A DNA stretch of 51,658 nt, taken from the NCBI RefSeq assembly GCF_001194135.2, contig NC_069004.1, positions 16,624,842 to 16,676,499 on the forward strand, given 5' to 3'. Shown one piece after another: positions 2,487-43,280 of this stretch. Positions within the stretch are counted from its first letter, which is position 1; each line of letters starts with the position of its first letter. Below the pieces are notes generated by a model. The model was not told the DNA's origin. It saw only the letters and a list, made by a program, of their open reading frames with translations, and searched no databases. This stretch comes from Octopus bimaculoides (lineage: Eukaryota). Position numbers and translations under genes: made by a program.

Positions 2487-5400
2487 GTGAGCCTCTTCTT
2501 GGTTTTAACCCACAATACACTTTCATTATCAGTGTGTGTGTTGTCTCTTTGATGATGATAAATTTTAACTGGGAATCCTCCAAGTTTCAGTCCTTTCTTT
2601 TACAATATTTGTGTACCTCACATAATATTATTTACTTTCACTCCAACCCACCTTCATCCTTTACTTTCAGACACACATACATGCACATATTATTAACATA
2701 CATATATCTTTGTAAATAGTAATGTTTCAAGTATGTGAAATAAGATCATTATGATTACATTTATTATTAGAGCTACACACAGTATCCACTACAATTCCCC
2801 AAACTTAATCTGTAGAGAATAATTATAACTAATATTATATGTATGTAATATTCTTTTTTTACTGTATTTTTTTTTTTTAACTACAATCAAGCTGGGACAT
2901 GACAACCTTGAAGGGTTAGTCAATTAAATCAACACCAGCACTTATTTTTTTTTCTTAACTCTGGTAGTTATTTCATCAGTTTCTATTTTGTTGGACTGCT
3001 AAGCCATGAGAATGTAAAGACAATATGGAGAGAGACAAACACACACAATGAGCATCCACACAGTTTTCATATGTTATATGTACCCATGTGGTAAGCATGA
3101 AAATCCACCATCATGGCAACTTTGACAATAAACTATTCAGTTCAGTCTTCCAATTATTAAAACATACCTCAGTGAAAAGGTACTTCATTAAGCTATTTTA
3201 TTGTGATGTTTAAACCTGTGGTGATTGGAATTGATATTTTATAATAGACATTTTTGTGGTCAAATCTTTTTTATTTTTATTTTAGTGTCACAGTGATTGG
3301 GTCCTAAACACATAGTGAAACTAATCACCTTGCATAAATTCTTTTGATTGACACTATGGATATTGTGGGTGTATTTAATGAAATAACACAATACCTTTTA
3401 TACATATCACCATTATCACATTTGCCATTGTCAGCTACTGACATTCAATTTTAGATGATATTCTGTTTTTATCAAATTTAAAGATGTGTGTGATGGTGTG
3501 TTCAAACACTATAACCACTGTTCTTTTCTCCCTGTGCTAAACCCTGCTTCTGTACAGTTTATAGTTTACATTTTTGTCATGCCCCAGATAACCAAAATTG
3601 AGCTTCTTATTTCATTACATTCACACACGCATACTCGCACATGCACACATACACTGGGTGGACAGGCTAAATTTGATAGTTTGCATGAAAGGAAAACAAA
3701 ACAATATCCCATCCAAAAATAAATTTGTTTTTAAAAAATCAAAAAATATCAACTAGGTAATGACTGGGAAATAACAGTTTATTCAAAGTAGCTGCCAACA
3801 GCTTCCACCATGACCTCAAAATGGCTCTGGAGCCTGGCACATGCATTCCTCACTGTCCCTGGGAAGACCTTGCACAAGCAGAGCAACTGATGTCTTTCTC
3901 AATTCTGCCCCACACAAAGTAATCCATGGAATTACAATCAGGGGGATTGGGAGGCCAGAAATTGGAGCTGATGAAATCATAGAAATTCTCTGACAAATCT
4001 TCTAACACTTTCCTGAGGTATGGCAAGGAACCAAGTCCTGCTGCCATACATATGGCCTTCCAGAAGCAACCCTCTCCAGCAGTCTCCAGCAGTTTCACAT
4101 AGTCATCTGAATTGAGCCTAAGGCCCTCTTCTAAGATGTACAGCAGCATGACATCACCCTCACTGGAGACACACCCAAAGATCATCACAGTTGGAGGGAA
4201 TTTAGTTTTCATGATACATGGGGCGTGTCTATGTCATTTCTTACAGCCTTTACAGAGTGTTGAGCAGCAGTTACATTGCCCTTTTGATACCCAGCAGGAA
4301 TCATCGTGATACAGGAACGCTTTTCCAATGAACTTGTTAAAAAATATATATTACTAACAGAAGCAGTATTAATACCGAGAGGTAATATTTATCCCCACTT
4401 AAACATGAATGTTCTGTTAGAACCAACTGTACTGCAGCAGATACCACCTCGTAGTTAGATGCATTTTTTAAGAGCAACCACTTTACAGTGTGTACTAGGG
4501 TGCATATATATTTTCATGGTACCACCTCTACAGAAGTTGCCTTGTCAGCAAGACCAAAGAGCCCTTTCAGGCCCCATGTTGTTACTGCTTGAATCAATTT
4601 TCACTCACTTAACTGTGTATGTTTGTGTGTATATATAAAGTATTGGGTCATCCCATAAATAATGGGGGTTTTTCTATACTTTTATTTTTCCAAATTAAGA
4701 TAAACAAAATTCTTTTTTAATCTAAAATTTACTCTCCTTCATTTTCTACAATGCTCTTCCATCTATCTGGTAGACTTGCAAGGCCCCTCTTCCAAAATTC
4801 ACTTGTCCGTGATGAAAAATGCTCCTCCAATACTGTTCTGACCTCACCTACAGACTTCATATTTTTTCCATCCAAATCATTTTGAAGACTGCGGAGAAAA
4901 TGATAATAAGATGGGGCAATGTCTGGTGAATATGGTGGGTGGGGCATCATTTCCCATTCAAACTGTTCCAGCCTTTGAAGTGTCATCCTGGCTTTACGTG
5001 GCCAAGCATTATGCTGATGAAAGAACACCTTTCGTCTTGAAATCAAAGATGGTCCTTTTTCTTCTAGCACTGAGTTACGCTGCTCAAGCTGCTTGCAGTA
5101 GATCTCCTTTGTTATTGTTTGGTTTGGGTTTAAAAGTTCAAAGTGGACTAAACCTTTCATAGTCCACCAAACAGATAACAACACCTTACGTGGGAGAAGA
5201 CCTTCTTTAACTTGGGGTGCCAGTGTTTCTCCTTTCCCTACCCACTGTCTTCAGGAGCTTGAAATTTTTATAGAGAACCCGTTTCTTGTCACCAGTCACT
5301 ATTTGGTCCAAAAATGATTCATTCATGAGATGTGACAGCAAAGAAGAGCTCACATTCACTCTCTGCACGTGATTAGACCCGAAAAGTTTGTGAGGAACCC

Positions 5401-25790: not shown

Positions 25791-26044
25791 TTTCCAGTAC
25801 TTGGTGTTTCTAGTAATACATCAGATGGTAGTTCCAGCCAGCTTTTCTTTTGAAATATATGGCTGCTTCACATTCTTATGGGAATATTTAAACATCTTAA
25901 AACTTCTTAAGTGTGAAGTCATTCTAATAACTTTCCTCATAAAATTGCATCATTGTTTTAAGGTAATAGTTTTAATATTTTTAAAGTCAATGAATGTGTG
26001 TGCACTTGTGTAGATGTATGTATACATATACAGTTATATGCTTA

Positions 26045-26358
26045 TATTCCTTATGCGCCCTTTTAAAGCCTGGTCAGGCTCACGGGGCCCGGTTTCCCGG
26101 TTTCTATGGCGTATGTGTCCCCCCCCCCCCCAGCTGGACAGGATGCCAGTCCATCGCAGTGTTACTCAAGAATTAGAAAGAAAGAGTGAGAGAAAGTTGG
26201 GGCAAAAGAGTACAACAGGGGTCGCCACCAAACCCTACTGGAGCCTCGTGGAACTTTAGGTGTTTTTGCTCAATAAACACAACGCCTGGTCTGGGAATCG
26301 AAACCGTGATCCTCCGACCATGAGTCCACTGCCCTAACCACTGGGCCATTGCGCCTTC
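26045..26358 (-). mobile_element. tRNA-derived SINE with clear A and B boxes
   Basis: ggcgcaaTGGCCCAGTGGttaggg...GGTTTCGATTCCCagacc followed by a non-tRNA body. Confidence 0.8.
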
Positions 26359-26544
26359 ACATATGCTTATATATGCACACATTAAAAATTTCAAAACCAT
26401 TTTTTTCAGCACCAGGACAGAATTCATGGAGGTTGATATTTAGATAAAAAGATAGTGCCATGTATGCACAGTGCTAACAGTTCCATTCTTTTGTTCAAAT
26501 TTTTGCTCCAAGGTTACCCCACATTTTTGATTTGAAGCTACCGG

Positions 26545-26900
26545 TCCTGTATTATTTAATTGGGTAATTTCAAATTTATATATGAAGACATCTCACACAA
26601 GAACCATATAATTTTGAACACAGTTGTAGTGCATCTTCTATCAGGTCTGACAAATTGTTTGTACTTATAAACACAACTTTTAAATGTTCGTTCTGTTGCC
26701 CCATTATATATTTTAGGTTCATTTTTGTTGTTTGTTTCTACCTTGGTGCTGTATGCTATCAACTTTGCCTGACTGTTAAGGAGAGAAGGAAGCAGAATTT
26801 GATAATTAGTTCTGTTAAGCTTGACCACTTGGCTTATCAGCATATCTCTTACTGTGTTGTTTTCTATTAATGAAGTAGCTGGATGCCGTACTGTGACAAC
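26545..26900 (-). mobile_element. Penelope-like element GIY-YIG endonuclease remnant
   Basis: LLNSQAKLIAYSTKVETNNKNEPKIYNGATERTFKSCVYKYK..TTVFKIIW aligns with the PLE pattern C..K.IVY.A.V.....K.YIG.TE.TFK.R...H...S..IW. Confidence 0.65.
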
Positions 26901-27104
26901 AATGTATCTCAATGGTATCACAGATATGTATATAGTCCCCAAAGTAACAGCCTTGACATCTGAGCATCAAAGAGTAAACTTTTCATTATTTCTGTCAAGG
27001 TGCCTCACAGTGAAATCTAGCACTGCATTGTGAAACAAACTTCTTAACCACACAGATATATCCATGGAATAGGAAAGGTTTTTAGTGATGGAAGTTAGAC
27101 ATGT

Positions 27105-27385
27105 GGAGGCACATGGCTTACTGGTGAGGGTATAGGACTCCTGATTGTAAGGTTGTGGTTTTGAATCCTGGACCAGGTGACACATTGTAGTCTTGAGCAA
27201 AAAACTTCATTTCACTTTGCTCCAGTCCACTCAACTGACAAGAGTAATCCTGCGATGGACCAATGTATATGCCATGAAACTGAGAAACCGGCCTTTATGA
27301 GTCAGTATGATTCAAGAAGGTAACTGAACTTTTAAGGTGGTGCTCCAGTGTGGCCACAGTCAAGTGACTGAAACAAGTGAAAGAG
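27105..27385 (+). mobile_element. tRNA-derived SINE
   Basis: ggaggcacatggctta..ggttttgaatcctgg..cttgagcaaaaaacttcatttcactttgctccagtccactc. Confidence 0.7.
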
Positions 27386-28942
27386 TGTAAACACAGAAAG
27401 AGGAAAGCTGAGTCTGAAAAAAAAACAACATAAAATGGCCCTGGGTGGAGCAATTTTCACCTTTCCTGCTTGCAACACTACAGAACAATCATTTGACTCA
27501 GAGAAGACAGTTACATTCACTATCTCTAAAACACAACCAGTATACATGGAAGACTGGCAGAATCAGTAGAGCATCAGACAAAATGCCCTGTGTTATTTAT
27601 TCCTGCACCTTGCATCCTGAATTCAGATCTACTGAAGTCAACTTTTGTCTTTCATTCTTCCAGGATCAACGAATAAAGGTGATGCCATGTGGTATTTCTT
27701 CTGACTCTGTGTTCTCAGTTCAAATCCTGCTCTCGCCCACTTGTGTGACAAATTTAATCCATTGCCCTGTTTGCAACCCACCTGGTCCTTGAGTGCTTTT
27801 AGCAGAGTCCACTCTGTTGCGAGCATGCATTCAGGCCCAGTCGCCAACCTTCCTCACTTTCTACATCCCACTACTTTTGGATGACCTCTAAACGGTCATC
27901 AGAATAGCCCTTCCCTCCTAATTAAAAAAATAACACTGACAGCTTCCACACTTGACCAACACAAAAGAACATTAGATGGTTAACACTAGCCCTCCTGGGT
28001 CTCCAATCTCTCCGTTAGCAACAAATAACAGCAAACTATGCATCATGAGGCAGATTTTCTACAGCTGGATGCCCTTCCTGTTGCTAGCTTTCATGTATTT
28101 CTTAATAAAGTGATATTTACCTCCTGGTCAGACGTTTTCACAAATGATTGGAAATGAAGGGCACCACTTGTATAACGGTGTCACTCATTTACTACTTTTA
28201 CATGATGTCAAGACTAGGAAATACACAGAAAAAAAATATACAACAGGCTTCTTGCAGTTTCCCCCCTACCAAATCCACTCACAAGGCTTTGGTCAGCTCA
28301 GGGCAATTGTAAATGGCACTAGTTTAAGGTGCCATGCAGTGAGTCTGAATGTGAAACTGCTTGATTTCTAACATCTTCGCTATAGCATCATTCTTCAACT
28401 TGAATTCCAATTTTAACTCTTTTGCGATTGGATTTCTAATGAAGTTCAATGTCTTAATGTTTCAATAAATTTTGAAATGGATCAACAACTTGATATAGTA
28501 TTTTAGATTAGTCATTTGGCAGAATCATTAGTGCATCAAACAAAATTATGTGTTGTATTTCTTCCAGCTCTTTGCATTCTGGGTTCAAATCCTGCTGAAT
28601 TATAGTAGCTTCCTTTCCGCCTTCTACACTTCATAACTGTTGCAGTTGATCATAAATTACATCATGCTCCTATAGAGTTATGGTTTAGATACAAGGCCCA
28701 GAAAACTGGGCTTAAAAGCATTCAACTACTGTTATCAGTGAATACAAAGAAATGCAAATATCTAAAGAAAACAAACAGGTTGTTTTTATTTTTCTTCATT
28801 AGAATTGAATTGGGAAATAAATAATGTCTCTAAAAGTGAATTTGTTTCAAAATTTTAAAAAATCATTCCAAGTCAATAAATTTGCAACTTTTATTTGAAC
28901 TTGGTTTAGTTCAAAGCTACCTAGAACCATTCCCAGTCTTAT

Positions 28943-30262
28943 CTAGACACCTTGTGATACAAATCTATATGTACTGATAGTTTTTTCATAAAGTTTGTTT
29001 CTTGGATGATAGAGACTAGAATAAATTGATACTTCTTCTTCGTTCTCCATCTCCAAATGAAAAATCTTTACCGTAACTTCATGGAATTCTTCTCCAAACA
29101 GGTTTTCTTCCACAAACTGATCTGCTTCCTTCAGATCATGTTTCAGGCTGGTCACATGACAACATTCAATAGAGTTGTAGTAAGGGTCAACAACATACAT
29201 TAAAAGATTAAATACAACGATTATGACAGGTTCACCAGTTGCAACGAAAGGCCTTATGGGAGAACTAAACAAATAGCAACCAACAATTACTGGGAAAAAC
29301 ATAGAGAAGATCCAAGTAATAATGGCCCTTATGGTGTGACCATGATTCCATTGACTGATTTGATGACAGGCAATTGCTTCAATGTTGTTCCAGTTCAGAA
29401 GCTTCCAGCTAAATGCTTCTGCATCTTCTTTTGTATGATAGAAATATCTGTCAATTCTTATGGTCTTACGAAACAGAATTTGATGAAATAAAGCAAGATT
29501 AAACTGTATAAAATTTGGCCTTACTGGTTTAGATGTTAATTCTACATTTTTTATATTGATATCAGCAAGACTTGCAATACGTCTCACGCTGTTTCGAAAT
29601 ACATCATTTAATTCTTGAGGTTTTGAAGTTATTTCATTCCATAAACTAATTAAAACAATAAATGGAATTAAGGCAGTCCAGACATATAAGAGGAAGAGAC
29701 CGCCAATGATGTGATGACCAGCAAGGAAAATGGTGAGCAGGGATAAAAAAAAGACTAAGCTTAAGTTTAGCTGCACAAAATGGTTAAAAAAAAAACTTGA
29801 TATTGATTCGGAGGGAAAGTGATATGAATTTTTCAAAATAAAATTGATGTAGGACCACTTGAACATGTGGTAAATTATGTAAAATAAACTCATGCAAATT
29901 GTGATCATGTATGTCCTAAAAACATCATTGTTTACAAAATTGCCCTTTGGGAAAAAAATACTTAAAACAATCCACTGGGAATGTAGAAAGTCTTCAATGT
30001 AAACTGAAGTTACAAAAGAACATTTGATTAAAGCAAGGAAGCAGTAGAAATAGATTCGGTGAGATTGATACGATTTTAGCTCATCAAAACTTTCCTGTGT
30101 GAATGGAATTCCTCTCCGAAGTGGTGGAGTTTTAAGTCCATTTAAATATAATTTATAATGAAAGGCAAGTATAAATTTCAATATCAATATTATCCAGTTC
30201 CAAACAACACCCAGCTGGAAAATGGTTTCAAATCCAAGTACGATATTTGGTAATAGACCCAT
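28943..30262 (-). CDS. ZMPSTE24-like: Divergent intronless CAAX prenyl protease 1 (ZMPSTE24/Ste24, peptidase M48A) homolog, predicted catalytically inactive, 439 aa
   Basis: Uninterrupted ORF with an in-frame TAA two codons upstream of the ATG and AATAAA about 48 nt after the stop (28890-28895). Colinear by-eye matches to human ZMPSTE24: [13 protein letters not shown]~[26 protein letters not shown]~[24 protein letters not shown]~[32 protein letters not shown]~[30 protein letters not shown]~FEFQADAF; SLYHP~YSHP. Multiple hydrophobic TM segments. Confidence 0.85.
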   Translation of the reverse strand: [439 protein letters not shown]

Positions 30263-31049
30263 ATTTTATAAATGTGGCCAATACTTCTGGATAACCCTTA
30301 TTTTCTTGAAAGTTTCTCACATTTCAAGCATGTTGTGATGACATCATGACATTGATGATGTCATAGCTGTTAAGATGAACTTCATGTGACTGAACATTTT
30401 CACATTACATCTACTTTCATGTAATACAGAAATTTAGCAGCTGACTAAAATTAAAATAGCACAAAAAGAAGAAATAAAGAAAATGGAAGGGCCAAACTGA
30501 CAATAGAAAGAAAAAAAAGTAGTAAGTTATCTTTCAAAATCAGACAAGAAATATAGTTAATTTTGAATCAGTGATATCTCTTATCAGATAATATTATTGA
30601 CTTCAGGAGAGAAAAAAATTACCATGAATATTATTATATAAAGAGCTGAACCAGTGGATATATTTTATGCTATGAAAGAAGAAATCTAACACCTAAAGTC
30701 TCAGAACTTTTTGTCTTAAAAAGCGAAGTCTTTTCTTCCTCATAGCATAAAATTTATTCCACAGAATATTGCTAACTTCCTTGAATTCTATCATTTGTAA
30801 ATATTTAAGCTAAGTGAAATCATTACCTTGTAGATGTAAAGAGTTTATCTCTGCTCAATAACAATAACTTATGCACAAAGCCAGTAATTTTTAAGTGAGA
30901 GATATAGTTAACATCAATTTCAGTATTTGACTGGAATTTATCTGAGAGGAAGAAAGGCAAAAGTTGACCTTGGTAAGATTTGAACTCAGCATCAAGGCAT
31001 GTTTCGCAATTCTGCCACTGCACCACACTAGTAATAATAATAATGATGA

Positions 31050-31260
31050 TGTCTTATATAGGCACAAGGCCAACAAATTCAAGAGGAGAGGTCAGTCAAT
31101 TACATCAACCTCCAGCACTTTGCTGATATTTTATCTTATTAACCCCAGAGGGATGAAAGGCAAAGTTGACCAAGGCATAGTTTGAACTCAGAACATAAAG
31201 GGACAGAACAAGTACCACATGGTATTTTTTCTGAAGCCCTAATGATTATGCCACTCCACT
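31050..31260 (-). mobile_element. SINE (family of 827-1046)
   Basis: gggatgaaaggcaaagttgacc..tttgaactcagaac on the + strand is the reverse complement of the SINE body. Confidence 0.65.
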
Positions 31261-31724
31261 ACACTAATAATCATTATCATCATCATCATTATGGTGGTGG
31301 TAGGGGTGGTGGTGATGATGATTAGTAGGAGACCCATGAAATTATTTACATTTTTTTAATAAACGTTTTCAATTCTGTTCTGATACATGAATTTATACAT
31401 CTTCAGGACATTTGTTTCATTATTTTAAAGATTTCTATCATGTCTTCAATTTCGTTCCATGGTCGAGGCTGTTGAAGGCACAACACACTGCAAAATATTA
31501 CTTCAAACACAGGCTCATGAAACCAATTTTGAGGAAGAAAGAGTGCAGTCAATTAAATCAATTCCAATACTTACATTTTATAGCCTATGAAGGAGGACAG
31601 AAAAAGTTGACTGTGATGGGATTGGAAATCAGAACAACTAAATATCACGGGACATTTTGTTAAATGCTCATTTCCTCATAGGAATATTATTTTTTTCATT
31701 TTGATATTCATGCACTGAAATATC

Positions 31725-31940
31725 AGTTTCAAATTTTGGCACAAGGCCAGCAATTTTGGAGGAGGAGATAAGTTGATTACATCAAGCCCAGTGCTCAACT
31801 GGTGCTTATTTTATTAACCCTAGAAGGATGAAATGCAAAATCAACCTCATACGAATTTGAACTCAGAATATAAAAACAGATGAAATGCCACTGAGTATTT
31901 TTCCCAGTGTGCTAATGATTCTACTAGCTCACCACCTTCA
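31725..31940 (-). mobile_element. SINE (family of 827-1046)
   Basis: ggatgaaatgcaaaatcaacctc..tttgaactcagaa..ctagctcaccaccttc. Confidence 0.7.
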
Positions 31941-32688
31941 TACACAGAATGAGAAACAAATTCTATAAACACCAAAAGACAATACATATGATGTGTGTCT
32001 GTATATTCAATACTATATATTCTCCTCCCCTCTACCACTAGACAGACAAACCTCCCACATCAAACATAGCCAAAACTGACACAATTTTCTTCCTGTTTGC
32101 TCAACTACCATATCAGACTAGGGACCATCAGTCACTACATCCACTTTTGACCCTATCTTAATCTGTCACTCTCTTAAAGAAATTACCTATCCTCTCCTTC
32201 CCTCGAGATCTACTATCTATATTGTACCTTATACTCACTGCCTTGTACTTGAAAGTTCACTCTGACACCCTAGCACTATCATCTTTATCTCCTTTCCAGC
32301 TACTCTCACCTCTCACATAATGTTGGGTAGCCTTGTATTTCCTTTATAGCAAAACACCTGTTCTTGTCCTGCTGTCATACCTCTCAACACTTGATATAAA
32401 ACCCCATTCCCCACTCTCTCTTTCTCTCTCAAATACACCTTCATGTAGTTGAGGAGGCTTTTTCCTTTAACTTTCTTTTCTTTATCTTGCAAGTTACTTG
32501 GCCACCTCACTAGTGCTGGTATCACAAAAAATGCATGGAGTACACACTATAAGGTGGTTGACATTAGGAAGGGTGTCTGTGTCAAAGCTAACATTGGGGC
32601 AGTTCTGCAGCTCACTGGAGCCTGTCAAACTGTGTCCAGCCCATGCCAGCATGGAAAATGTATGTTAAATTATGATGAAGATAATGGT

Positions 32689-32725
<37 letters not shown>

Positions 32726-34222
32726 AAAGGGATTAAAAATCCAGGCAGATATCAATAAAGCACTGTTTGAAATGAATTTGGTTAACTATATCAAACAATC
32801 AGACACCAATAAATGCAAGCAGAATATACATCCAAAATGATTTATCATGTATGACAAATAGATCCAAATATTATTTAGAAGAATTTCAAGAAATTCAGAG
32901 TATTAGACAAAAAAATACAGATAGAGAAAATCACATTTTTAATTGTTGAATTCACCATACAAAGCTGACAATTGTTTCTATTGTTTTAACATACTTAGAG
33001 ATAGAAAATATTGAAATTAGTATATCCAAAAATACATGTTAACACATTTTCAAGGTGATCCAGATTTAGTTAAATATTTCCAGTACACAAATGCATACAA
33101 AAAGAATGTTAAGAAGAAATATAATCTGAGGAAAGCTGATTTTATATTCAGCTCTTGGCGATGTCAATGGCTAACGAAAGAATAAAAAATAAACATAAGA
33201 ATTTTACATTACAACAATTAGAAACACAGATCCTATGTCATGACAATTAGTTATCTATCTATTAAATATAGTAAACTTTTTAAGAAAAATTATGCTTATT
33301 ATATAACATATGAAAAGCAATTAAAATTAAGAATTGAAATATTTAAACACCTTCCGAAATTTCTGACAACATTTCATTGTAAGATTCCCATGAAAATTTA
33401 ATAAAATTAATTTAGAAGTAATTATATAATACATTTCTTCACCGTAAAGATCACATGTAGAATTTCCAATATTGTATGATGGTGTGTAACTAATAATGGA
33501 CCACTTTAAATCATACTTAATGTTTTTATCTTTTAAATCTCAAATGCGTTTACTACGATTTGTAGAATTACTTTTCTTTTATACTTAAATGAATCAGAAT
33601 GATTGTGAAATCTAGATTTCTAATTTGTAGCAGATGAACCTATGTAATAATACTTATGATCCCCTGTTATTCCTTTACATTGATAAACTACTTTTCCTTA
33701 AACACTGATTTTCTATCGGACAAACAATTTTGTTTTTGAAATTATACAGGCATTTATTCACTTTTGTTTGGTACTCGTAGTTAAAAGAATTCTTATTAGT
33801 CCTCCTCTCAGAATATTACATAGTATAATACACCATTCACATACTCAATAGCTACCAATATTCTTCAACAATTCTTTGCTGCACCAGGTATTTCCCACCT
33901 TCAAATAAATATGGGAAATTATTTAATCACCATATTATAAAATTTTCGTGTTCAACCACTAGAAATTTAGCTGAGATTATAACAGCACATAATAAACAGA
34001 GAATTGGGGAATGTCTTAACTCAAAATCTATAAAAGCTAAGGAGCTAGAAACATCGACATCTGAGAATCCTGATAGATAATAACACAGAACAGACAGGGT
34101 GTTTTTACATCTTTTTGACCATAAGAGAAAATTTACTCTACAGTCAGTGCAGGGAATTTGCCTTTTAGCAGTTGAAATATGTCACAAACGTATTTTAAAT
34201 AACCTAAACTTTGCACACACAC

Positions 34223-34257
<35 letters not shown>

Positions 34258-34269
34258 CAGACAGACAAA

Positions 34270-34620
34270 TTGGTAATTAAGGGCCTCTCCCTCAAAGTGA
34301 AAGGCAAATTGTATGATGCTTGTGTATATACAGCTATGCTAGATAGCAGTGAAACATGGGCTATGACTACAGAGGACTTGTGAAAGCTTGAAAGAAATGA
34401 AGTCACCATGCTCAGCTGGATGGGTAATGTCAGTGTACACATACAACAGTGTAAATGATGTAAGAGGAAAACTGGGTAGAAGAGGCATCAGATGTGTGCA
34501 AGAGAGAACTGGTTTGGTCATGTGATGCATATGGATGAGGACAGCTGTTTAAAGAAGTATCAATTTCTAATTGTGGAGGGAACAAGGGACTGGGACTTGT
34601 GGTGATTTGCTGTATTTGAG
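34270..34620 (+). mobile_element. RTE-clade LINE 3' fragment
   Basis: LVIKGLSLKVKGKLYDACVYTAMLDSSETWA..LERNE..MLSWM, WFGHV-like motif. Paralogous to 39100-39450. Confidence 0.75.
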
Positions 34621-34962
34621 AAGACACATCAAGCTAAATAAAATCGCAGCCATCCATACATACAGACATGTCCTTTATGGCCATACCCCACTCCCTCTCC
34701 TAGCTGAGAGGTCATTGTCTTTCAGGTGCTGGTGCCATGTAAAATGCACTCATACCTGTGCAACATAGATGCACCTGTGCCAGTGACATGTAAAAAGCAC
34801 CCAGCATACTCTGTAATGTGGTTGGCAGTAATAAAGGAATCAAGCTAAGAAACCATGCCAAAACAGATAATTGGAGTTTGGACAGCTCTCCAGTTCCTGT
34901 CAAACTGTCCAACTCATGCCAGCAGGGAAAATGGATATTAAATGATGATGATGATGATGATG

Positions 34963-35002
<40 letters not shown>

Positions 35003-35634
35003 TGTAGGTATAGATGTGTGATTAAGAAACTTACCTCACCAATAAATGGTTGTCCTACTGTGCAGCATCTTGCAAAGATTGATCAAAGCCCTATAAGTGG
35101 ACTTGGTACGGAGAAAGAAGCTCGTCATATACACGTGTGTGTGTGTGGTGGGGTGTACATGTTTACAATTATGCTTCTTTGAGAATTGTCACTATTTCCT
35201 CTGTCAACAAATCGTCCACTGGCTTTTTGTGCTTTTGAAGATATGCGGAATAAGAAATCCCTTACTTGAAAAACAGATAAGGGTTAGTTACAGGAAGCAC
35301 AATGATTATATGGAAAAAGAAGCATATTGATTGCAAACTAATGAATACACACACACACACACACACACATACCTACAAACCTGCATATGGATGTTTAGGT
35401 GGTAAGGGCTTTATCTTAATATTATTTTCTTCAGTCTTGGCACTTAGAATTGGATGGCAACTGTAACTAAGCAATCTTATTTAAAGAAGGCACTGCTCAC
35501 CCAGGAAGGAGCTGGTAAAGTTGTCTCAAATATTGCCTGCCCCTACAAGGTGGTCTGTTAGCCACAACTGGTGGTTGTTCGATTCAGTAGAGCAACAATC
35601 GTAAAAATGTAAACAAATGAAAGATACATGTATA

Positions 35635-36000
35635 CAGGGTGTTAAGCGAAATTTGAAAATTTTTTAATGTCACCTTTCTTCATAAACAGCTTGATGCGAA
35701 CAGTCAACAGTGTTGGAGAGCATAAAGATTAAAGTTGTAGTTGGGAAAAAGTTAGCTGACGTGGAGGACTCAAAGCTATCTGAATATCGGAGAATTGTTA
35801 CCTGTATCATGTTGATTCATGCTGGATATCAAAATGCCAGCATCATGGCTGCTGTTCAATGCTGTGTGAACACCATAAAGACTGTAAGAAATGACATGGA
35901 CAGCAGCAATGGAGACTATGAAGCTGTGGCCAACAAGAAGGGAGACAGCAGCCATTCTGGCTGTGTCTGTATACTGGAACTCATCCTCACATCCTTGAAC
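35635..36000 (+). mobile_element. maT/Tc1-like transposon 5' fragment (TIR plus HTH-coding start)
   Basis: ta|cagggtgttaagcgaaatttga TIR. xEDSKLSEYRRIVTCIMLIHAGYQNASIMAAVQCCVNTIKTVRNDMDSSNGDYEAVANKK resembles a Tc1/maT N-terminal HTH. Confidence 0.65.
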
Positions 36001-36174
36001 AGGACAAAGACAAATGAACTTGATGCACAAAAAGCTTTGTCATTGTCACCCATCAGGATTGGTTTGGTAGCCACATAAGAAATATTTGGTTGCTTTGGGT
36101 TTACAGCAGATAAGTGAATAAACAAGAGGAGACAACACTCAATCATCAGATTCACACATTCTGCAGCACATCGA

Positions 36175-36760
36175 CAAGGTGTCTGACAGTTTGCATATAA
36201 AGAAAAGAAAACAATATTCCATCCAAAAATAAATATATTTAAAACAAATCTAAAGATGTCAACTAGATTATGGCTGGAAGATAAAAGTTTATTCAAAATA
36301 GCTACCCTCAGCTTCCACCATGGCCTTGAGACTGCTCCAGAACCTGGTGCATGTGTTCTTCACTGTGTCCCTGAGAAGATCTTCAAACACCTCCTTGATT
36401 TCCGCCACCATCTCGGTCTTGATGTTGCAGGTAGAGTGGTTAGTGTCTTTCTCAACTGTATCCCACACATAGTAATCTATGGGATTACAATGGGGTGGGA
36501 GGGATTACGAGGCCAGTAATTGGGGCTGGTGAAGTCATAGAAATTCTCCAACAACCACTTCTGACTCTTTCTAGATGAATCCTGAGGGCCACACATGACC
36601 TTCCAATAGCAACCCTCTCCAGCCAGGATTTGACCACAGTCTCCAGTAGCTTCACAGTCATTTGAATTGAGTCCAAGGTCTTGTTGAAGGATGTAGGATT
36701 GATTTCTGGCCATGTGGACCACAGTACAATGTCTTCGAGTGACATTTTTAACAAACTCCT
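36175..36760 (-). mobile_element. maT (DD37D) transposon 3' fragment
   Basis: LVKLLETVVKSWLERVA.G....QD..SRKSQKWLLENFYDFTSPNYWP...CNPIDYYVW, colinear with 3651-4320 including the 3' UTR. Confidence 0.8.
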
Positions 36761-37357
36761 TTCTTTTTCAGTTATTTGTTTAAATGATTTGAGATTGCTG
36801 TGCTTTTGTTTTGAGAATTTTCCTTTTTCTGGGAATCATAACATCAACCAGAACCTTACTGGAACAAGTTTAATGCATATAGCTTCTTTTATTAATGTTT
36901 ATTCACTGAATTGTTTCTTTGTTCATTACTGGTACTTATGCTATCAACCTTCAACTCAAAAACAAAACTGAATAAATAAATAAATACTGACACATAAATA
37001 TTTAATCTTACCCTGTGCAATCTCTTCACCCTCTCTGTTCTGTAAAGTTAAATATTTTGATCTAGCAAGATCAAAATTTATTTGAGTACACGTATGAGCA
37101 TTTACTTACATGAAATTTGTGATATGAATTAACAAAAGAGCCTCCACATAGTTGTTCAACTTGCTAAAATAGCAGTGGAATCTCCTTGAAACAGCACCTT
37201 CGAAAGCAAGGATAACTCCCACCTTCCTTCTATTTTAGTGTTGGTAGCCCTGAAAATGGTTTTGGGTGTTGCCCTCCCTTCTTGAACTAAGTTATATATA
37301 TATATATATATAACAGTGCTATATATATAACAGTGCTATATATATATATATATATAT

Positions 37358-37628
37358 NNNNNNNNNNNNNNNNNNNNNNNNNNNNNNNNNNNNNNNNNNN
37401 NNNNNNNNNNNNNNNNNNNNNNNNNNNNNNNNNNNNNNNNNNNNNNNNNNNNNNNNNNNNNNNNNNNNNNNNNNNNNNNNNNNNNNNNNNNNNNNNNNNN
37501 NNNNNNNNNNNNNNNNNNNNNNNNNNNNNNNNNNNNNNNNNNNNNNNNNNNNNNNNNNNNNNNNNNNNNNNNNNNNNNNNNNNNNNNNNNNNNNNNNNNN
37601 NNNNNNNNNNNNNNNNNNNNNNNNNNNN
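37358..37628. other. Assembly gap (N run) next to a TA microsatellite
   Basis: Run of n. Confidence 0.99.
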
Positions 37629-37904
37629 TCAGTAGCATTTCTCCTGTCTCTTTCTCAATCTATTCTTTTATTTTTTTTTTATATGCTTCAGTCATTTGAT
37701 GGCAGCCATACCGAAACACCACCTTTAAAGGGTTTTAGTCAGAGAAATCAACCCCAGGATTTATTCTTTGTAAGCCTAGTACTTATTCTATTGGCCTCTT
37801 TTACCAAACCACTAAGTTATGGGGACATAAACACACCAACATCGGTTATCAAGTGAGGGGGGGGGGACAAGCACAAATACAAAAACACACATAAATATAT
37901 GATG

Positions 37905-38035
37905 GGCTTCTTTCAGCTTCCGTCTACCAAATCCACTCACAAGGCTTTGATCGACCTGAGTCTATAGTAGAAGACACTTGCTCAAAGTGCCACGCAGTGG
38001 GACTGAACCTGGAACCATGTGGTTGGGAAGCAAGA
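37905..38035 (-). mobile_element. SINE fragment (cttgcttcccaaccacatggttcc..caaagccttgtgagtggatttggtagac family)
   Basis: Shared with 28250-28310 and 35010-35140. Confidence 0.7.
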
Positions 38036-38069
38036 AAATTCCTGGTTCATCAGAAATTACTGCTGATGA

Positions 38070-39570
38070 AGTGAAATACAGCCTAGTCACCTATATAGTT
38101 TATTATGTTGTCCAGGAAAGTATCATGCTCAATGACTAGTGTAGCAGCATTATAGTCAGTTGTCACAAGGGTAAAGATGTTTTAGAGAAAAGTAATTACA
38201 GAGGTGCCAAACAGCTGGACCAGGTTAGGAACGTTACGGTAAGAGTCATAGTTCAACTAATCAAGAGCAGAGTTAACCCAGATGAGATGCAGTTTGGTTC
38301 TGTGTCCTGGAGAAATACTACTGATGCTACCTTTTTAGTAAGGCAACTGCAGTAGAAGTATTTAACCAAAAATAAACCATTGTACATGGCATTTGTCAAC
38401 ATGGAGAAAGTCTTCAACAGGGTTCCTCATGCTCTCAAATAGAGGTCACTGGAGAAGCTAGGGGTAGATTATAGGCTGGCGAGAGCCTTACAAGCCATGT
38501 ACCGGGGTGCTGTCAGTACAGTGAAAATCAGCAACAAGTATAGCAAAAAATTTAGTGCGCAGATAGCTGTTCACAAAGACTCAGTTCTCAGCCACCTGTT
38601 TTCTTTTTATCATAGTCCTCCAGGCCATAACAGCGGAGTTTAAGACTGATTGCCCATGGGAGCACCTCCATGCTGATGACCTTGTTTTTATAGTAGAATT
38701 TGAGAAGAAATTTCAATTGTGGAAGCAAGGATGAGAACTAAAGGGTCTTAAAATTAAGACCAAAGTCCTGATAAACAGGAAAGCAAACATACTACAAATC
38801 TCTTCAGGGAAATGGCTCTGCTTGAAATGTAGAAATGGTACAGGTAGAAATACCATGTAGTGTACCCAGTGCAAGCTAAGGACACATAAAAGGTGCAGTG
38901 TAATTACAGGAGGATTAACAGAAAAAGCAGCCTTTGTGTCTGGCAGATGTGCAGGAACAATAAACAAAAAACACAAGAAATAGAGTCCCTCAAGTGCCTA
39001 GGGGGATCCTTAGCAGTAGCAGATAATTTCTGTTACCAATTAGCAATGAAGGAGGATTCTGAAAGTGTAGTTGCTAGAATAAGAACTAGCTGGACATTGC
39101 CTCTGTTGGCAACAAAGAGCTTTTCCCTCAGGGTGAGAGGCAGATTGAATGATCTTTGTGTATGAATAGCTCTGCTACATGGTAGTGAAATGTGGGCTGT
39201 GAATAGAGAGGGAATGCAAAGGATTGAAAGAAACGATGACACTAATATTCACAGCTGGATGTTTAATGGTAGTGTGCTTGTTCAACAAAGTATAAATGTT
39301 TCGAAATAAAAATTGGGCATAAGAGGCACCAGATGTAGTGTGCAAGAGAGAAGACTGTACTGGTATGGTCACAAGAAGCATATGGATGAAGACAGTTGTA
39401 CAAAGAAGTGCTGATCTTGAAATGTGGAACTTGTAGAAGACGAAGTCCCAGGAAGATGTAGGACAAAGTGGTGTAAAATGACCGTCAGATGTTGATCCTA
39501 ACATAGGAGATGACAAATGACTGAGATGATTGGCAATTTGCTGTGCTTGAGATGACCTGTCCATCTAAGT
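38070..39570 (+). mobile_element. Decayed RTE-clade LINE (reverse transcriptase and C-terminal region)
   Basis: KGKDVLEKSNYRG, MQFG, TTDATFLVRQLQ*KY, LYMAFVNMEKVFNRVP, LHADDLVFI (YADD-type), CxxC region, stops and frameshifts. Confidence 0.9.
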
Positions 39571-42186: not shown

Positions 42187-43280
42187 GTGAAACACTCTGC
42201 AATGGGTGTAAGAGATGATCTCTCTAACTGGTTGAAGTCCTTCATTTTCGACCGAAAAAAGGTTGTCACAGTTCTAGGACAGCACTTTTCACCCTATGAG
42301 ATGACATCTGGGGTACCACATGGATCTGTTCTTGGCCCCCTTTTATTTGTTGCATATATTAATGACATAGATGCCAACTTAAAGAATGTCACAGTGCTGA
42401 AATATGCAGATGACATCAAGCTGTACCTTGAAATAAAAAGGACAGATCCTGTACACTATAGATCTTTATTGCAATCAGACCTGGACACGATCCAGCAATG
42501 GATCATGGACTGGCAACTCACGCTGGCTGTGGACAAATGTACCACCATGCATTTTGGGAGGAAAAACCCAGCGTCTACTTACTCCTTCTACAACACTAAT
42601 CTCAAAAAGTCTTCTTGTGAATGTGACCTGGGCATTATTGTCTTGACATCACTTACCAAGTCCTTTGTGAGCCACTCTCCGGCTATCTATCCAAGGCTTT
42701 ATACAGCTATGGTGCGGCCTCACCTGGAATTTGCGTCTCCGGTCTGGAACCCCTATCTTGCTCAGGACATTAACCATCTGGAAACCGTTCAGCGACGTGC
42801 AACCAAGAAAATACCCTCCATCAGGCATTTCCATATTCTGAATGCCTTACTCCCCTGGGCATAGATACATTGAAACTCCGACATCTAGCAGCTGACTTGG
42901 CAGACACCCATAAAATTATTAACCATCTTACTAACAATAACTCTGAGCACCTTTTCAAATTCCACCTGTCTAACACCTGTGGACATGTTTACAAAGTCAG
43001 AAAACAGCACAGCTCCCATGACTTTCGGAAACACTTTTTCACGCTAAGAGTTGCTGAAGTATGGAACAAACTGCCAGCATCAGTTGTTAGTTGTCGGAGC
43101 ACTGCATCCTTCCAAACTTCCATGCTTCCTGAGATTCACCAACACTACACCTGATTTTCTCCCCTCCATACACACGCAAGCAAGGATCTGACTCATGCAC
43201 TGTTCACTTTCCAGACATTTGTACAATACTGCATATGCTTTATACACACTTTTGACAAGTTGTAGTGCACCTGAGCACTG
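42187..43280 (+). mobile_element. CR1/L2-group LINE 3' fragment (reverse transcriptase C-terminus)
   Basis: SGVPHGSVLGPLLFVAYIND..KYADDIKLY..VRPHLEFASPVWNPY..LETVQRRATK..FFTLRVAEVWNKLP, with an in-frame stop and a 3' tail. Confidence 0.92.

What the first reader, a model, noticed from the sequence alone, without database searches (positions are those of the whole stretch)
28943..30262. Intact, intronless ZMPSTE24/Ste24 paralog that has lost its zinc-protease active site: candidate pseudo-protease retrogene
Seen: a 439-codon unbroken ORF, colinear with ZMPSTE24 end to end, in a region where every transposon ORF is decayed. The HExxH motif reads H300-Q-I-S-Q304 (29365-29351). Both Q codons are CAA, one base change from GAA (E) and from CAT/CAC (H). 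The third ligand of FEFQAD aligns to L377 in DLKEAD. The SNAY motif is gone, while WxxGHT, ADxF and the C-terminal HP remain. Established: human H335/E336/H339/E415 are needed for catalysis; Ste24 forms a 7-TM barrel; and catalytically dead ZMPSTE24 has been reported to keep IFITM-linked antiviral activity. Inference: a retroposed copy under selection for a non-catalytic role, such as a prenyl-peptide binder or decoy, translocon or membrane scaffold, antiviral factor, or germline-specific protein.
Basis: partly seen in the sequence, partly recalled or inferred. Interest (0 to 1): 0.85.

Follow-up and report, generated by a model that had tools for sequence, protein, structure and literature searches.

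The report
Ancient catalytically dead cephalopod ZMPSTE24 paralog
This octopus gene is an intron-free, very diverged copy of the membrane protease ZMPSTE24/Ste24 that lost its zinc active site before octopuses and cuttlefish split, yet has been kept intact by natural selection since, so it almost certainly does a non-cutting job that is still unknown.

Summary
Window 28943-30262 (-) is a 439-codon ORF that matches ZMPSTE24 from end to end: hhalign 99.1%, and the clade profile hits human ZMPSTE24 structures at E 1.6e-15. HExxH reads H300-Q-I-S-Q304, and the third zinc ligand is L377.

The ORF is not a young pseudogene.
- It is intact and free of indels in four Octopus genomes, with dN/dS of 0.08-0.25.
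- A 33%-identical ortholog is intact in four cuttlefish-type loci, with dN/dS of 0.04-0.12.
- All eight copies carry C-H-Q-x-x-Q and [L/I]-[K/R]-E-A-D.
- The Gln codons change synonymously between lineages, so the substituted residues are themselves conserved.

Only 18 of 120 near-invariant Ste24 columns survive. The predicted fold is still the Ste24 barrel (TM 0.62-0.70). The coding sequence has no introns, whereas oyster ZMPSTE24 has at least 10 exons, so an old retroposition is a reasonable inference.

The best-conserved part is a new acidic C-terminal tail. A tandem CRE-like promoter motif sits at the same offset in both lineages.

The closest precedent is Drosophila CG7573, a retroposed, testis-specific Ste24 paralog with an altered active site.

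Expression, function and the canonical octopus ZMPSTE24 gene could not be checked.

The parts
28943..30262 (-). Single-exon coding sequence, 439 aa plus stop, of a diverged Ste24/ZMPSTE24-fold protein.
   Evidence: ORF listing and sequence. Intact orthologs in O. sinensis, O. vulgaris and a further octopus. Profile hit to human ZMPSTE24 structures at E 1.6e-15. hhalign 99.1%.
29645..30106 (-). Residues 53-206: the Peptidase_M48_N region, the N-terminal five membrane helices.
   Evidence: Pfam PF16491 at 30.9 bits against a gathering score of 27. High-confidence helices in AlphaFold model 2.
29351..29365 (-). Degenerate HExxH motif H300-Q301-I302-S303-Q304. The catalytic Glu and the second zinc-binding His are both Gln.
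   Evidence: Sequence. Alignments to human H335/E336/H339. C-H-Q-x-x-Q is invariant in eight loci, with synonymous CAA/CAG turnover.
29120..29137 (-). D376-L377-K378-E379-A380-D381. L377 occupies the position of the third zinc ligand, human E415.
   Evidence: The residue is Leu or Ile in all eight loci.
28946..29068 (-). Residues 399-439: a clade-specific, acidic C-terminal tail ([16 protein letters not shown]..LYEKT..TYR). It is the best-conserved and least Ste24-like segment.
   Evidence: Residues 401-439 are 58-75% identical between octopus and cuttlefish against 33% overall, and only 5-11% identical to the canonical consensus. pLDDT is low here in model 2.
30339..30363 (.). Tandem CRE-like octamers, TGACATCA and TGATGTCA, at -101 and -84 from the ATG. 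Putative core promoter element.
   Evidence: Cuttlefish-type loci have TGACGTCA at -101/-102 and TGAC(A/G)TAA at -83 from the homologous Met. Background is about one site per 4-6 kb.
30263..30421 (-). Upstream block conserved with the most distant octopus. Putative promoter and 5' UTR.
   Evidence: The blastn block between window and L002 spans window 30421-28641 at 92.7% and breaks beyond it.
28641..28942 (-). Downstream block conserved at 94% with the most distant octopus. Putative 3' UTR with AATAAA at 28890-28895 and 28785-28790.
   Evidence: Conservation ends where the other species carries an insertion of about 300 bp.

Best explanation
This is a functional, single-exon gene for a catalytically dead member of the Ste24/ZMPSTE24 (MEROPS M48A) fold: a pseudoprotease.

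Origin. It most likely arose by retroposition of a ZMPSTE24 mRNA in, or before, the common ancestor of octopuses and cuttlefish (inferred). That split is on the order of 200-300 million years old (my own knowledge, not tested).

What changed. It lost the catalytic Glu and two of the three zinc ligands before that split (shown: all eight copies in both lineages carry the same replacements). It has since been held under purifying selection (shown).

What it keeps. It retains the multi-helix membrane barrel of Ste24 (predicted). Most of the canonical substrate-binding and catalytic surface has been replaced. In its place is a conserved polar C-H-Q-x-x-Q / E-A-D cluster and a new, strongly conserved acidic C-terminal tail.

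Likely mechanism (inferred, low confidence, about 0.25). It sits in the ER or nuclear-envelope membrane and binds a client polypeptide or ligand in or at the chamber without cleaving it. The engineered ZMPSTE24 E336A 'trap' mutant holds IFITM3 in this way, and iRhom and Derlin pseudoproteases hold membrane clients in the same manner.

Expression is probably driven by a conserved tandem CRE-type promoter (inferred).
For: Homology and fold
- Pfam M48_N is above threshold.
- The clade profile hits human ZMPSTE24 chains 5SYT/4AW6/6BH8/2YPT at E 1.6e-15 over 13-399 against 18-438.
- hhalign against 30 canonical sequences gives 99.07%, E 1.6e-18, over 409 columns.
- AlphaFold models from a shallow and a deep alignment both retrieve only ZMPSTE24/Ste24p as significant hits. 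TM is 0.50-0.58 for the shallow model and 0.62-0.70 for the deep one.

Loss of catalysis
- E336->Q, H339->Q, E415->L/I, H459->R and R465->K in all eight loci.
- Only 18 of 120 columns that are at least 97% conserved in 117 canonical Ste24 proteins are retained.

Selection
- Window against the distant octopus: Sd 62, Nd 24, dN/dS 0.085, binomial p 1e-24.
- Window against O. sinensis or O. vulgaris: dN/dS 0.25, p 0.001.
- Cuttlefish-type L008 against L009: dS 0.70, dN/dS 0.117, p 6e-35.
- The octopus ORFs have no indels while the flanks carry gaps.
- The Gln codons differ synonymously between lineages.
- The ORF is the only block shared between the cuttlefish-type locus and the window, at E 6e-77.

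Taxon anchor
- Run ERR12945500, which carries locus L012, is described as Acanthosepion esculentum short reads in 10.1101/2025.04.22.649952.

Retroposition
- The coding sequence is uninterrupted in all eight loci. Canonical Ostrea edulis ZMPSTE24 spans 29.5 kb in at least 10 exons.

Promoter
- CRE-like pairs sit at -101 and -84 in both lineages.

Non-catalytic precedent
- Protease activity of ZMPSTE24 is dispensable for viral restriction (PMC5379977).
- E336A traps IFITM3 (10.64898/2026.02.27.708584).
Against: - No expression evidence could be obtained. The Logan contigs that carry the orthologs end in repeats and look genomic.
The top 120 hits include gastropods, bivalves and a chiton but no cephalopod. 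'Paralog' therefore rests on the near-universality of Ste24 (PMC3362292 and my own knowledge).
- H300, H309, E379 and D381 are retained, and Gln can occasionally coordinate metals, so metal binding is not excluded.
- The second AlphaFold model used an alignment dominated by canonical sequences, which biases it toward the Ste24 fold.
- The canonical substrate-binding strand (SNAY) is also lost, which weakens the 'substrate trap' analogy.
- The phylogenetic origin is unresolved. The clade is a long branch in the neighbour-joining tree and shows no preference for mollusc sequences.
- No poly(A) or target-site duplication remains.
Confidence: 0.8

Rival explanations
1. It is a young processed pseudogene whose ORF is still open by chance.
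For: The gene is intronless, sits among decayed transposon fragments, has a degenerate active site and has no expression data.
Against: Eight intact ORFs occur across two lineages that share only 33% identity. dN/dS is 0.04-0.25 with p values down to 1e-24 and 6e-35. There are no indels in the octopus ORFs. P(439 open codons by chance) is about 2e-14.
Confidence: 0.01
2. It is still an active metalloprotease that uses a rearranged metal site (for example H300, H309, E379, D381, C299) or a different catalytic mechanism.
For: H300, H309, E379, D381 and C299 are invariant in the clade. Some apparent pseudoenzymes have migrated catalytic residues (a general point in PMC10211241, listed).
Against: The general-base Glu of HExxH is Gln in all copies, and a mutation of this residue (E336A) is used as the catalytic-dead form of ZMPSTE24 (PDB 2YPT listed). 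Two of the three ligands are replaced, and 102 of 120 near-invariant columns are changed. E379 lies at i+2 from the ligand position on a helix. H307 is not conserved in cuttlefish.
Confidence: 0.05
3. It is the only ZMPSTE24 ortholog of coleoid cephalopods. On this reading it is highly derived and not a paralog, and prelamin or CaaX processing is handled otherwise.
For: No canonical cephalopod ZMPSTE24 appeared among the 120 listed hits, and none lies in the window.
Against: Only 120 of 3415 hits were listed, ranked against a choanoflagellate query, so absence from that list is uninformative. Canonical orthologs are present in gastropods, bivalves and a chiton. Ste24 is a conserved gene across animals and plants, usually single-copy (PMC3362292).
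Confidence: 0.05
4. The ORF is not a stand-alone gene. It is part of a larger multi-exon or transposon-associated transcription unit, as in the O. vulgaris model CAI9740057.1.
For: That 43-kb model uses 25 codons of the ORF in frame, with an AG acceptor and a GTAAAG donor inside the ORF.
Against: The model uses only 6% of the ORF, and the rest of it is a FAM200/ZBED5-type transposon-derived domain. The start Met, the stop and the full length are conserved in both lineages. NCBI's O. sinensis model is the full 439-aa ORF. Conservation falls off about 160 bp upstream and 300 bp downstream. Purifying selection acts over the whole ORF.
Confidence: 0.07

Closest known systems
Human ZMPSTE24 / yeast Ste24p (MEROPS M48A; PDB 4AW6, 5SYT, 2YPT, 6BH8, 4IL3)
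   Same: Homologous over the full length. Same M48_N domain. Same predicted helical membrane-barrel fold, TM 0.62-0.70. H335, H344, A418-D419 and a few structural residues are retained.
   Different: E336, H339, E415, H459 and R465 are all replaced. The SNAY strand and 102 of 120 near-invariant positions are changed. The acidic insert before the HExxH helix is shortened. There is a new conserved acidic C-terminal tail. The coding sequence is intronless, against at least 10 exons in the oyster gene. Identity is about 15%.
Drosophila CG7573 (Adolphsen et al. 2012, PMC3362292)
   Same: [quoted passage not shown] It has sequence changes at the HEXXH active site, is conserved across the genus and evolves faster than the parent.
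   Different: It is an independent event restricted to Drosophila, less than about 65 million years old according to that paper. The cephalopod clade is much older and far more diverged. CG7573 is testis-specific by FlyAtlas, whereas expression of the cephalopod gene is unknown. The two sequences could not be compared directly here.
Engineered ZMPSTE24 E336A 'trap' mutant (Spear et al. 2026 preprint, 10.64898/2026.02.27.708584; Fu et al. 2017, PMC5379977)
   Same: A Ste24-fold protein without the catalytic Glu. It binds a client (IFITM3) more stably and retains a non-proteolytic antiviral activity. This gives a working model for a natural dead copy.
   Different: E336A keeps the zinc site and the whole substrate-binding surface, while the cephalopod protein has lost both. 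The IFITM link is described in vertebrates and nothing here ties the cephalopod protein to it. No binding data exist for the cephalopod protein.
iRhom and Derlin rhomboid pseudoproteases
   Same: Ancient, selected, catalytically dead relatives of intramembrane proteases that act by binding membrane clients (PMC6451368 and PMC3149277, listed).
   Different: They have an unrelated fold and family and are widely distributed in eukaryotes. This is an analogy of principle only.

Membership tests
Ste24/ZMPSTE24 (MEROPS M48A; Pfam PF16491 + PF01435) | N-terminal five-helix domain, Peptidase_M48_N (PF16491), above the gathering score | tested here: met
   30.9 bits against a cutoff of 27, residues 53-206.
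Ste24/ZMPSTE24 (MEROPS M48A; Pfam PF16491 + PF01435) | Peptidase_M48 catalytic domain (PF01435) above the gathering score | tested here: not met
   No PF01435 hit even at E<=10 and no single-sequence PDB hit. Homology of this half is nevertheless shown by profiles: E 1.6e-15 and hhalign 99.1% through human residue 465.
Ste24/ZMPSTE24 (MEROPS M48A; Pfam PF16491 + PF01435) | HExxH zinc-binding and catalytic motif | tested here: not met
   H-Q-I-S-Q in octopus and H-Q-L-G-Q in cuttlefish, in eight loci.
Ste24/ZMPSTE24 (MEROPS M48A; Pfam PF16491 + PF01435) | Third zinc ligand, the Glu of the ExxAD motif (human E415) | tested here: not met
   Leu or Ile at the aligned position.
Ste24/ZMPSTE24 (MEROPS M48A; Pfam PF16491 + PF01435) | Seven-transmembrane helical barrel with a capping protease domain | tested here: met
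   Prediction only. Model 2 has pLDDT 77.8 and pTM 0.75. The top 12 Foldseek hits are all ZMPSTE24/Ste24p, TM 0.62-0.70. The shallow-alignment model agrees.
Ste24/ZMPSTE24 (MEROPS M48A; Pfam PF16491 + PF01435) | CaaX or prelamin A endoprotease activity | not testable with these tools
   Needs biochemical assays or yeast complementation.
Pseudoprotease (pseudoenzyme) | Homologous to an enzyme family but lacking essential catalytic residues | tested here: met
Pseudoprotease (pseudoenzyme) | Maintained by purifying selection, so not a pseudogene | tested here: met
   dN/dS 0.04-0.25 in two lineages, with intact ORFs in eight loci.
Pseudoprotease (pseudoenzyme) | Expressed as a protein and experimentally inactive | not testable with these tools
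   No RNA or protein data were reachable. The Logan contigs are genomic.
Retrogene (processed copy of a multi-exon parent) | Coding sequence without introns where the parent family has many | tested here: met
   Uninterrupted coding sequence in eight loci. Ostrea edulis ZMPSTE24 has at least 10 exons over 29.5 kb.
Retrogene (processed copy of a multi-exon parent) | Poly(A) remnant and target-site duplications at the flanks | tested here: not met
   None seen by reading about 565 bp downstream of the stop, and no target-site duplication was noted on reading the upstream flank; no formal repeat search was run. These traces are not expected to survive at this age, so their absence says little.
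Retrogene (processed copy of a multi-exon parent) | An identifiable intron-containing parent gene in the same genome | not tested

The most novel reading that the evidence does not exclude
Coleoid cephalopods carry a lineage-specific Ste24-fold pseudoprotease with a new function. On this reading it is a natural 'trap' or receptor. It uses the hollow membrane barrel, a remodelled H-Q-x-x-Q/E-A-D pocket and a new acidic C-terminal cap to hold a client rather than cut it. Candidate clients are prenylated, tail-anchored or translocon-stalled proteins. Expression would be under cAMP/CREB- or CREM-type control, for example in the germline or in activity-regulated neurons. This would be the first naturally selected proof that the Ste24 barrel has a protease-independent cellular function.
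Probability: 0.2. Interest if true: 0.7.

Novelty: new member of a known kind. Interest (0 to 1): 0.5.

Why it matters
ZMPSTE24/Ste24 is usually a single-copy, highly conserved protease. Whether its barrel has protease-independent roles in antiviral defence, translocon unclogging or membrane-protein topology control is debated, mostly on the evidence of engineered E336A mutants.

A copy that lost the active site more than 200 million years ago (my own dating) and has been kept under strong selection since is a natural experiment. It shows that the fold is useful without catalysis. The conserved residues it retains, namely C-H-Q-x-x-Q, E-A-D and the acidic tail, point to what that use requires.

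Together with Drosophila CG7573 it suggests that retroposed, active-site-dead Ste24 copies have been recruited more than once.

There is also an annotation point. NCBI names the O. sinensis ortholog 'CAAX prenyl protease 1 homolog', which overstates what the protein can do.

Tried and rejected
1. Single-sequence searches under-call the homology. Pfam gave no Peptidase_M48 hit, NCBIfam gave nothing, and phmmer against the PDB gave nothing. Profiles were needed.

2. Finding the canonical octopus ZMPSTE24 failed. The last allowed homolog search (choanoflagellate query) listed molluscs but no cephalopod. Looking up Logan-only candidates (P0118, P0099, P0006, P0007) gave runs I could not assign to a species.

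3. Expression evidence from Logan contigs was not available. The contig ends fall in repeats with no poly(A), so they are genomic.

4. Species assignment by accession in the literature worked for only one run. ERR12945500 could be tied to Acanthosepion esculentum. ERR3431203 is numerically adjacent to a Mytilus coruscus run. I rejected a mussel origin because its protein falls in the same 90% cluster as the A. esculentum one. The SRR11869384-94 (including SRR11869390), ERR129213xx, ERR1237/1240/1485 and ERZ21867824 records remain unassigned.

5. Phylogenetic placement is uninformative. The neighbour-joining tree puts the clade on a long branch at the base of Metazoa, probably by long-branch attraction. 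Profile scores show no preference for mollusc sequences.

6. A-to-I RNA editing cannot rescue the active site. Editing CAA gives CAG, CGA or CGG (Gln or Arg), never Glu or His, and CTG has no A. This is reasoning from the codons.

7. Synteny between the octopus window and the cuttlefish-type locus shows nothing shared except the ORF and a mariner-like fragment.

8. Rfam and tandem-repeat scans of the window found nothing relevant.

9. Literature searches for a ZMPSTE24 pseudoenzyme or for any cephalopod CAAX protease paper found none.
Full report
**1. The observation**

Window 28943-30262 (minus strand) is a 439-codon ATG-to-stop ORF. It is the longest ORF in the 51.7-kb window by a factor of two. 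In 200 block-shuffles of the window the longest ATG ORF averaged 125 aa and never exceeded 249 aa. With the local base composition, the chance of 439 open codons is about 2e-14.

**2. Is it really a ZMPSTE24/Ste24 homolog?**

- Pfam reports only the N-terminal Peptidase_M48_N domain, at 30.9 bits against a cutoff of 27.
- There is no Peptidase_M48 hit, no NCBIfam hit and no phmmer hit to any PDB chain.
- An exhaustive phmmer scan of 1.84 billion representative proteins found canonical Ste24 proteins only at E of about 1e-4.

Once relatives were found and a clade profile was built (alignment A4), the homology became unambiguous.
- The profile hits the four human ZMPSTE24 crystal-structure sequences at E 1.6e-15, in one colinear alignment of profile positions 13-399 to residues 18-438.
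- hhalign against 30 canonical sequences gives 99.07% probability, E 1.6e-18, with query 11-426 aligned to human 16-465.
- The clade profile hits all 120 canonical Ste24 sequences in hand.
- Aplysia ZMPSTE24 aligns to the window by tblastn over its residues 8-411.

Two AlphaFold models were made, one from a shallow 8-sequence alignment (pLDDT 54) and one from a 96-sequence alignment (pLDDT 77.8, pTM 0.75). Both retrieve only ZMPSTE24 and Ste24p structures as significant Foldseek hits. TM is 0.50-0.58 for the first and 0.62-0.70 for the second. The deep alignment is dominated by canonical sequences, so the second model is biased toward that fold. The shallow model is not biased in that way, and it agrees.

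**3. The active site**

Three independent alignments agree on these equivalences:
- H300 = H335
- Q301 = E336, the catalytic base
- Q304 = H339, a zinc ligand
- L377 = E415, the third zinc ligand

The profile alignments also put R421 at H459 and K427 at R465.

Of 120 columns that are at least 97% conserved in 117 canonical Ste24 sequences, only 18 are retained across the clade. The SNAY strand reads P-N-F-I.

- H307 is Tyr in cuttlefish.
- H309 corresponds to canonical H344, which is conserved but is not a zinc ligand.
- E379 lies two positions after the ligand position on a helix.

A-to-I RNA editing, which is extensive in coleoids (my own knowledge), cannot turn CAA into a Glu or His codon, and CTG has no A to edit.

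**4. Orthologs and selection**

The same 1320-nt ORF, with no indels, is present in three other genomes:
- O. sinensis. This is XP_029650768.1, which NCBI names 'CAAX prenyl protease 1 homolog'. It is 98.2% identical in nucleotides.
- O. vulgaris, also 98.2% identical.
- A more distant octopus known only from Logan assemblies of runs SRR11869384-94, 93.5% identical.

Nei-Gojobori dN/dS values are as follows.

| Comparison | Sd | Nd | dS | dN/dS | Binomial p against neutrality |
|---|---|---|---|---|---|
| Window vs distant octopus | 62 | 24 | 0.275 | 0.085 | 1e-24 |
| Window vs O. sinensis or O. vulgaris | 12 | 12 | 0.046 | 0.25 | 0.001 |

The ORF has no gap columns. The flanks carry gaps, and their conservation collapses about 160 bp upstream and 300 bp downstream in the distant species.

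More distant relatives were found at 33-34% identity: a 462-aa ORF on an ENA contig (P0011, locus L008) and a cluster of Logan ORFs (P0005, P0009, P0010). One of the runs that carries them, ERR12945500, is described as Acanthosepion esculentum (golden cuttlefish) short reads in the Sepia officinalis genome preprint. These relatives are therefore decapodiform. For L008 that assignment is an inference.

Re-reading the cuttlefish-type loci shows that the real start is the Met homologous to the octopus Met1. That gives intact 440-aa ORFs in all of them. Between the two cuttlefish-type lineages dS is 0.70 and dN/dS is 0.117 (p 6e-35). Between the two closer ones dN/dS is 0.04.

All eight loci read C-H-Q-x-x-Q and [L/I]-[K/R]-E-A-D. 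The Gln codons are CAA in octopus and CAG or CAA in cuttlefish, so the replacement residues are themselves maintained.

The ORF is the only block shared between the cuttlefish-type locus and the octopus window, at E 6e-77.

The active site was therefore lost before the octopus-cuttlefish split, and the gene has been kept since. No other relatives were found in 5.8 billion clustered proteins or in the exhaustive scan. Squid, Vampyroteuthis and Nautilus could not be checked specifically.

**5. Retrogene?**

The coding sequence is uninterrupted in all eight loci. The canonical Ostrea edulis gene spans 29.5 kb with at least 10 coding exons. Human ZMPSTE24 has 10 exons (my own knowledge).

Simultaneous absence of every intron is most simply explained by retroposition. 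That remains an inference, for three reasons.
- No poly(A) tract or target-site duplication remains.
- The phylogenetic origin is unresolved.
- The presumed parent gene in Octopus was not retrieved.

**6. What is conserved instead**

Identity between octopus and cuttlefish averages 33%. It rises to 58-75% in the last 40 residues (FHLEME, an acidic run, then YHPR..LYEKT..TYR). That segment is only 5-11% identical to the canonical consensus, and AlphaFold models it poorly.

Upstream of the ATG both lineages carry a pair of CRE-like octamers at the same offsets.
- Octopus: TGACATCA at -101 and TGA[T/C]GTCA at -84.
- Cuttlefish: TGACGTCA at -101/-102 and TGAC[A/G]TAA at -83.

The surrounding DNA is otherwise unalignable. 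The background density of such sites is about one per 4-6 kb. This argues for a conserved promoter, and so for a transcribed gene, and it hints at CREB/ATF/CREM-type regulation.

**7. How it most likely works**

Shown:
- It is homologous to Ste24.
- The catalytic residues are gone.
- It is ancient and under purifying selection.

Predicted:
- The Ste24 membrane barrel persists.

Inferred:
- It is a pseudoprotease that acts by binding, not by cleaving.

The nearest mechanistic model is the engineered ZMPSTE24 E336A mutant. That mutant traps and stabilises IFITM3 (preprint 10.64898/2026.02.27.708584). In addition, the protease activity of ZMPSTE24 is dispensable for viral restriction (PMC5379977).

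The cephalopod protein has also lost the zinc site and most canonical substrate-contact residues, and it has gained a conserved acidic tail. Its client or ligand is therefore probably different from those of ZMPSTE24. I put about 0.8 on the core statement and only about 0.25 on the 'client trap' mechanism.

**8. Comparison with what is known, and novelty**

By descent the protein belongs to the M48A/Ste24 family, and its fold is predicted to be that of the family. It fails the family's defining catalytic features, so it should be filed as a non-peptidase homolog, not as a 'CAAX prenyl protease'.

The closest precedent is Drosophila CG7573. Adolphsen et al. 2012 (PMC3362292) describe it as follows:
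- a Ste24 paralog probably born by retrotransposition;
- ancestrally intronless;
- with altered active-site residues;
- conserved across the genus and fast-evolving;
- testis-specific.

The same paper states that Ste24 is single-copy in almost all other animals.

The cephalopod gene is an independent, much older and more thoroughly remodelled case. I found no publication describing it. I therefore rate it a new member of a known kind, namely retroposed pseudoprotease paralogs. It is of moderate interest: a useful natural experiment for the protease-independent functions of the Ste24 barrel, but not a new principle.

**9. Limits**

- There are no expression data.
- The canonical octopus ZMPSTE24 was not shown.
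- The taxon of several loci rests on a single accession-to-species link.
- The species of the window itself is inferred only as an Octopus close to O. vulgaris and O. sinensis.

Noticed in passing
window 30339-30346 and 30356-30363; L008 9966-9973; L002 about 109-133: Tandem CRE-like octamers (TGACATCA / TGA[T/C]GTCA) lie at -101 and -84 from the start codon. Cuttlefish-type loci have TGACGTCA and TGAC(A/G)TAA at the same offsets, although the rest of the upstream DNA is unalignable. This is a candidate conserved CREB/ATF/CREM-type promoter.
   Followed up: partly
window 29072-29146 (-); L006 10001-53136: The O. vulgaris gene model CAI9740057.1 spans 43 kb and carries a FAM200/ZBED5 RNase-like transposon-derived domain. 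It uses 25 codons of this ORF (residues 373-397) as an in-frame internal exon, with an AG inside codon 372 as acceptor and a GTAAAG donor after codon 397. It may be an annotation chimera or a real read-through transcript.
   Followed up: partly
L008 10001-10066; L009 317-382; L007 728-793: Cuttlefish-type loci have an extra ATG 66 nt upstream of the conserved start. It is in frame and open in L008, which gives the 462-aa P0011. In the A. esculentum-type loci a TGA at codon 19 closes it, making it a short upstream ORF.
   Followed up: partly
window 28946-29068 (-): The last 40 residues or so, an acidic [12 protein letters not shown] run followed by YHPR..LYEKT..TYR, are the most conserved part of the protein between octopus and cuttlefish (58-75% against 33% overall). 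They have almost no similarity to canonical Ste24. They may be a new functional module.
   Followed up: partly
window 4729-5184 (-) and 42187-42864 (+); L008 about 12535: Decayed transposon ORFs: a mariner-type Transposase_1 fragment and an RVT_1 reverse-transcriptase fragment. A similar transposase fragment lies near the cuttlefish-type ortholog, most likely by coincidence.
   Followed up: no
L002 1829-2127 against window 28641-28592: An insertion of about 300 bp sits 300 bp downstream of the stop codon in the distant octopus species. Its tRNA-like/SINE-like tail (GGACTTGAACCCGGAATGCG) is shared with the window. This insertion marks the end of the conserved 3' block.
   Followed up: no
window 33001-34000 and 37001-38000: Two 1-kb bins have unusually low G+C (26-27% against about 36% for the window). 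Within 26000-39000, only a short 17-bp tandem repeat at 37303-37346 was detected.
   Followed up: no
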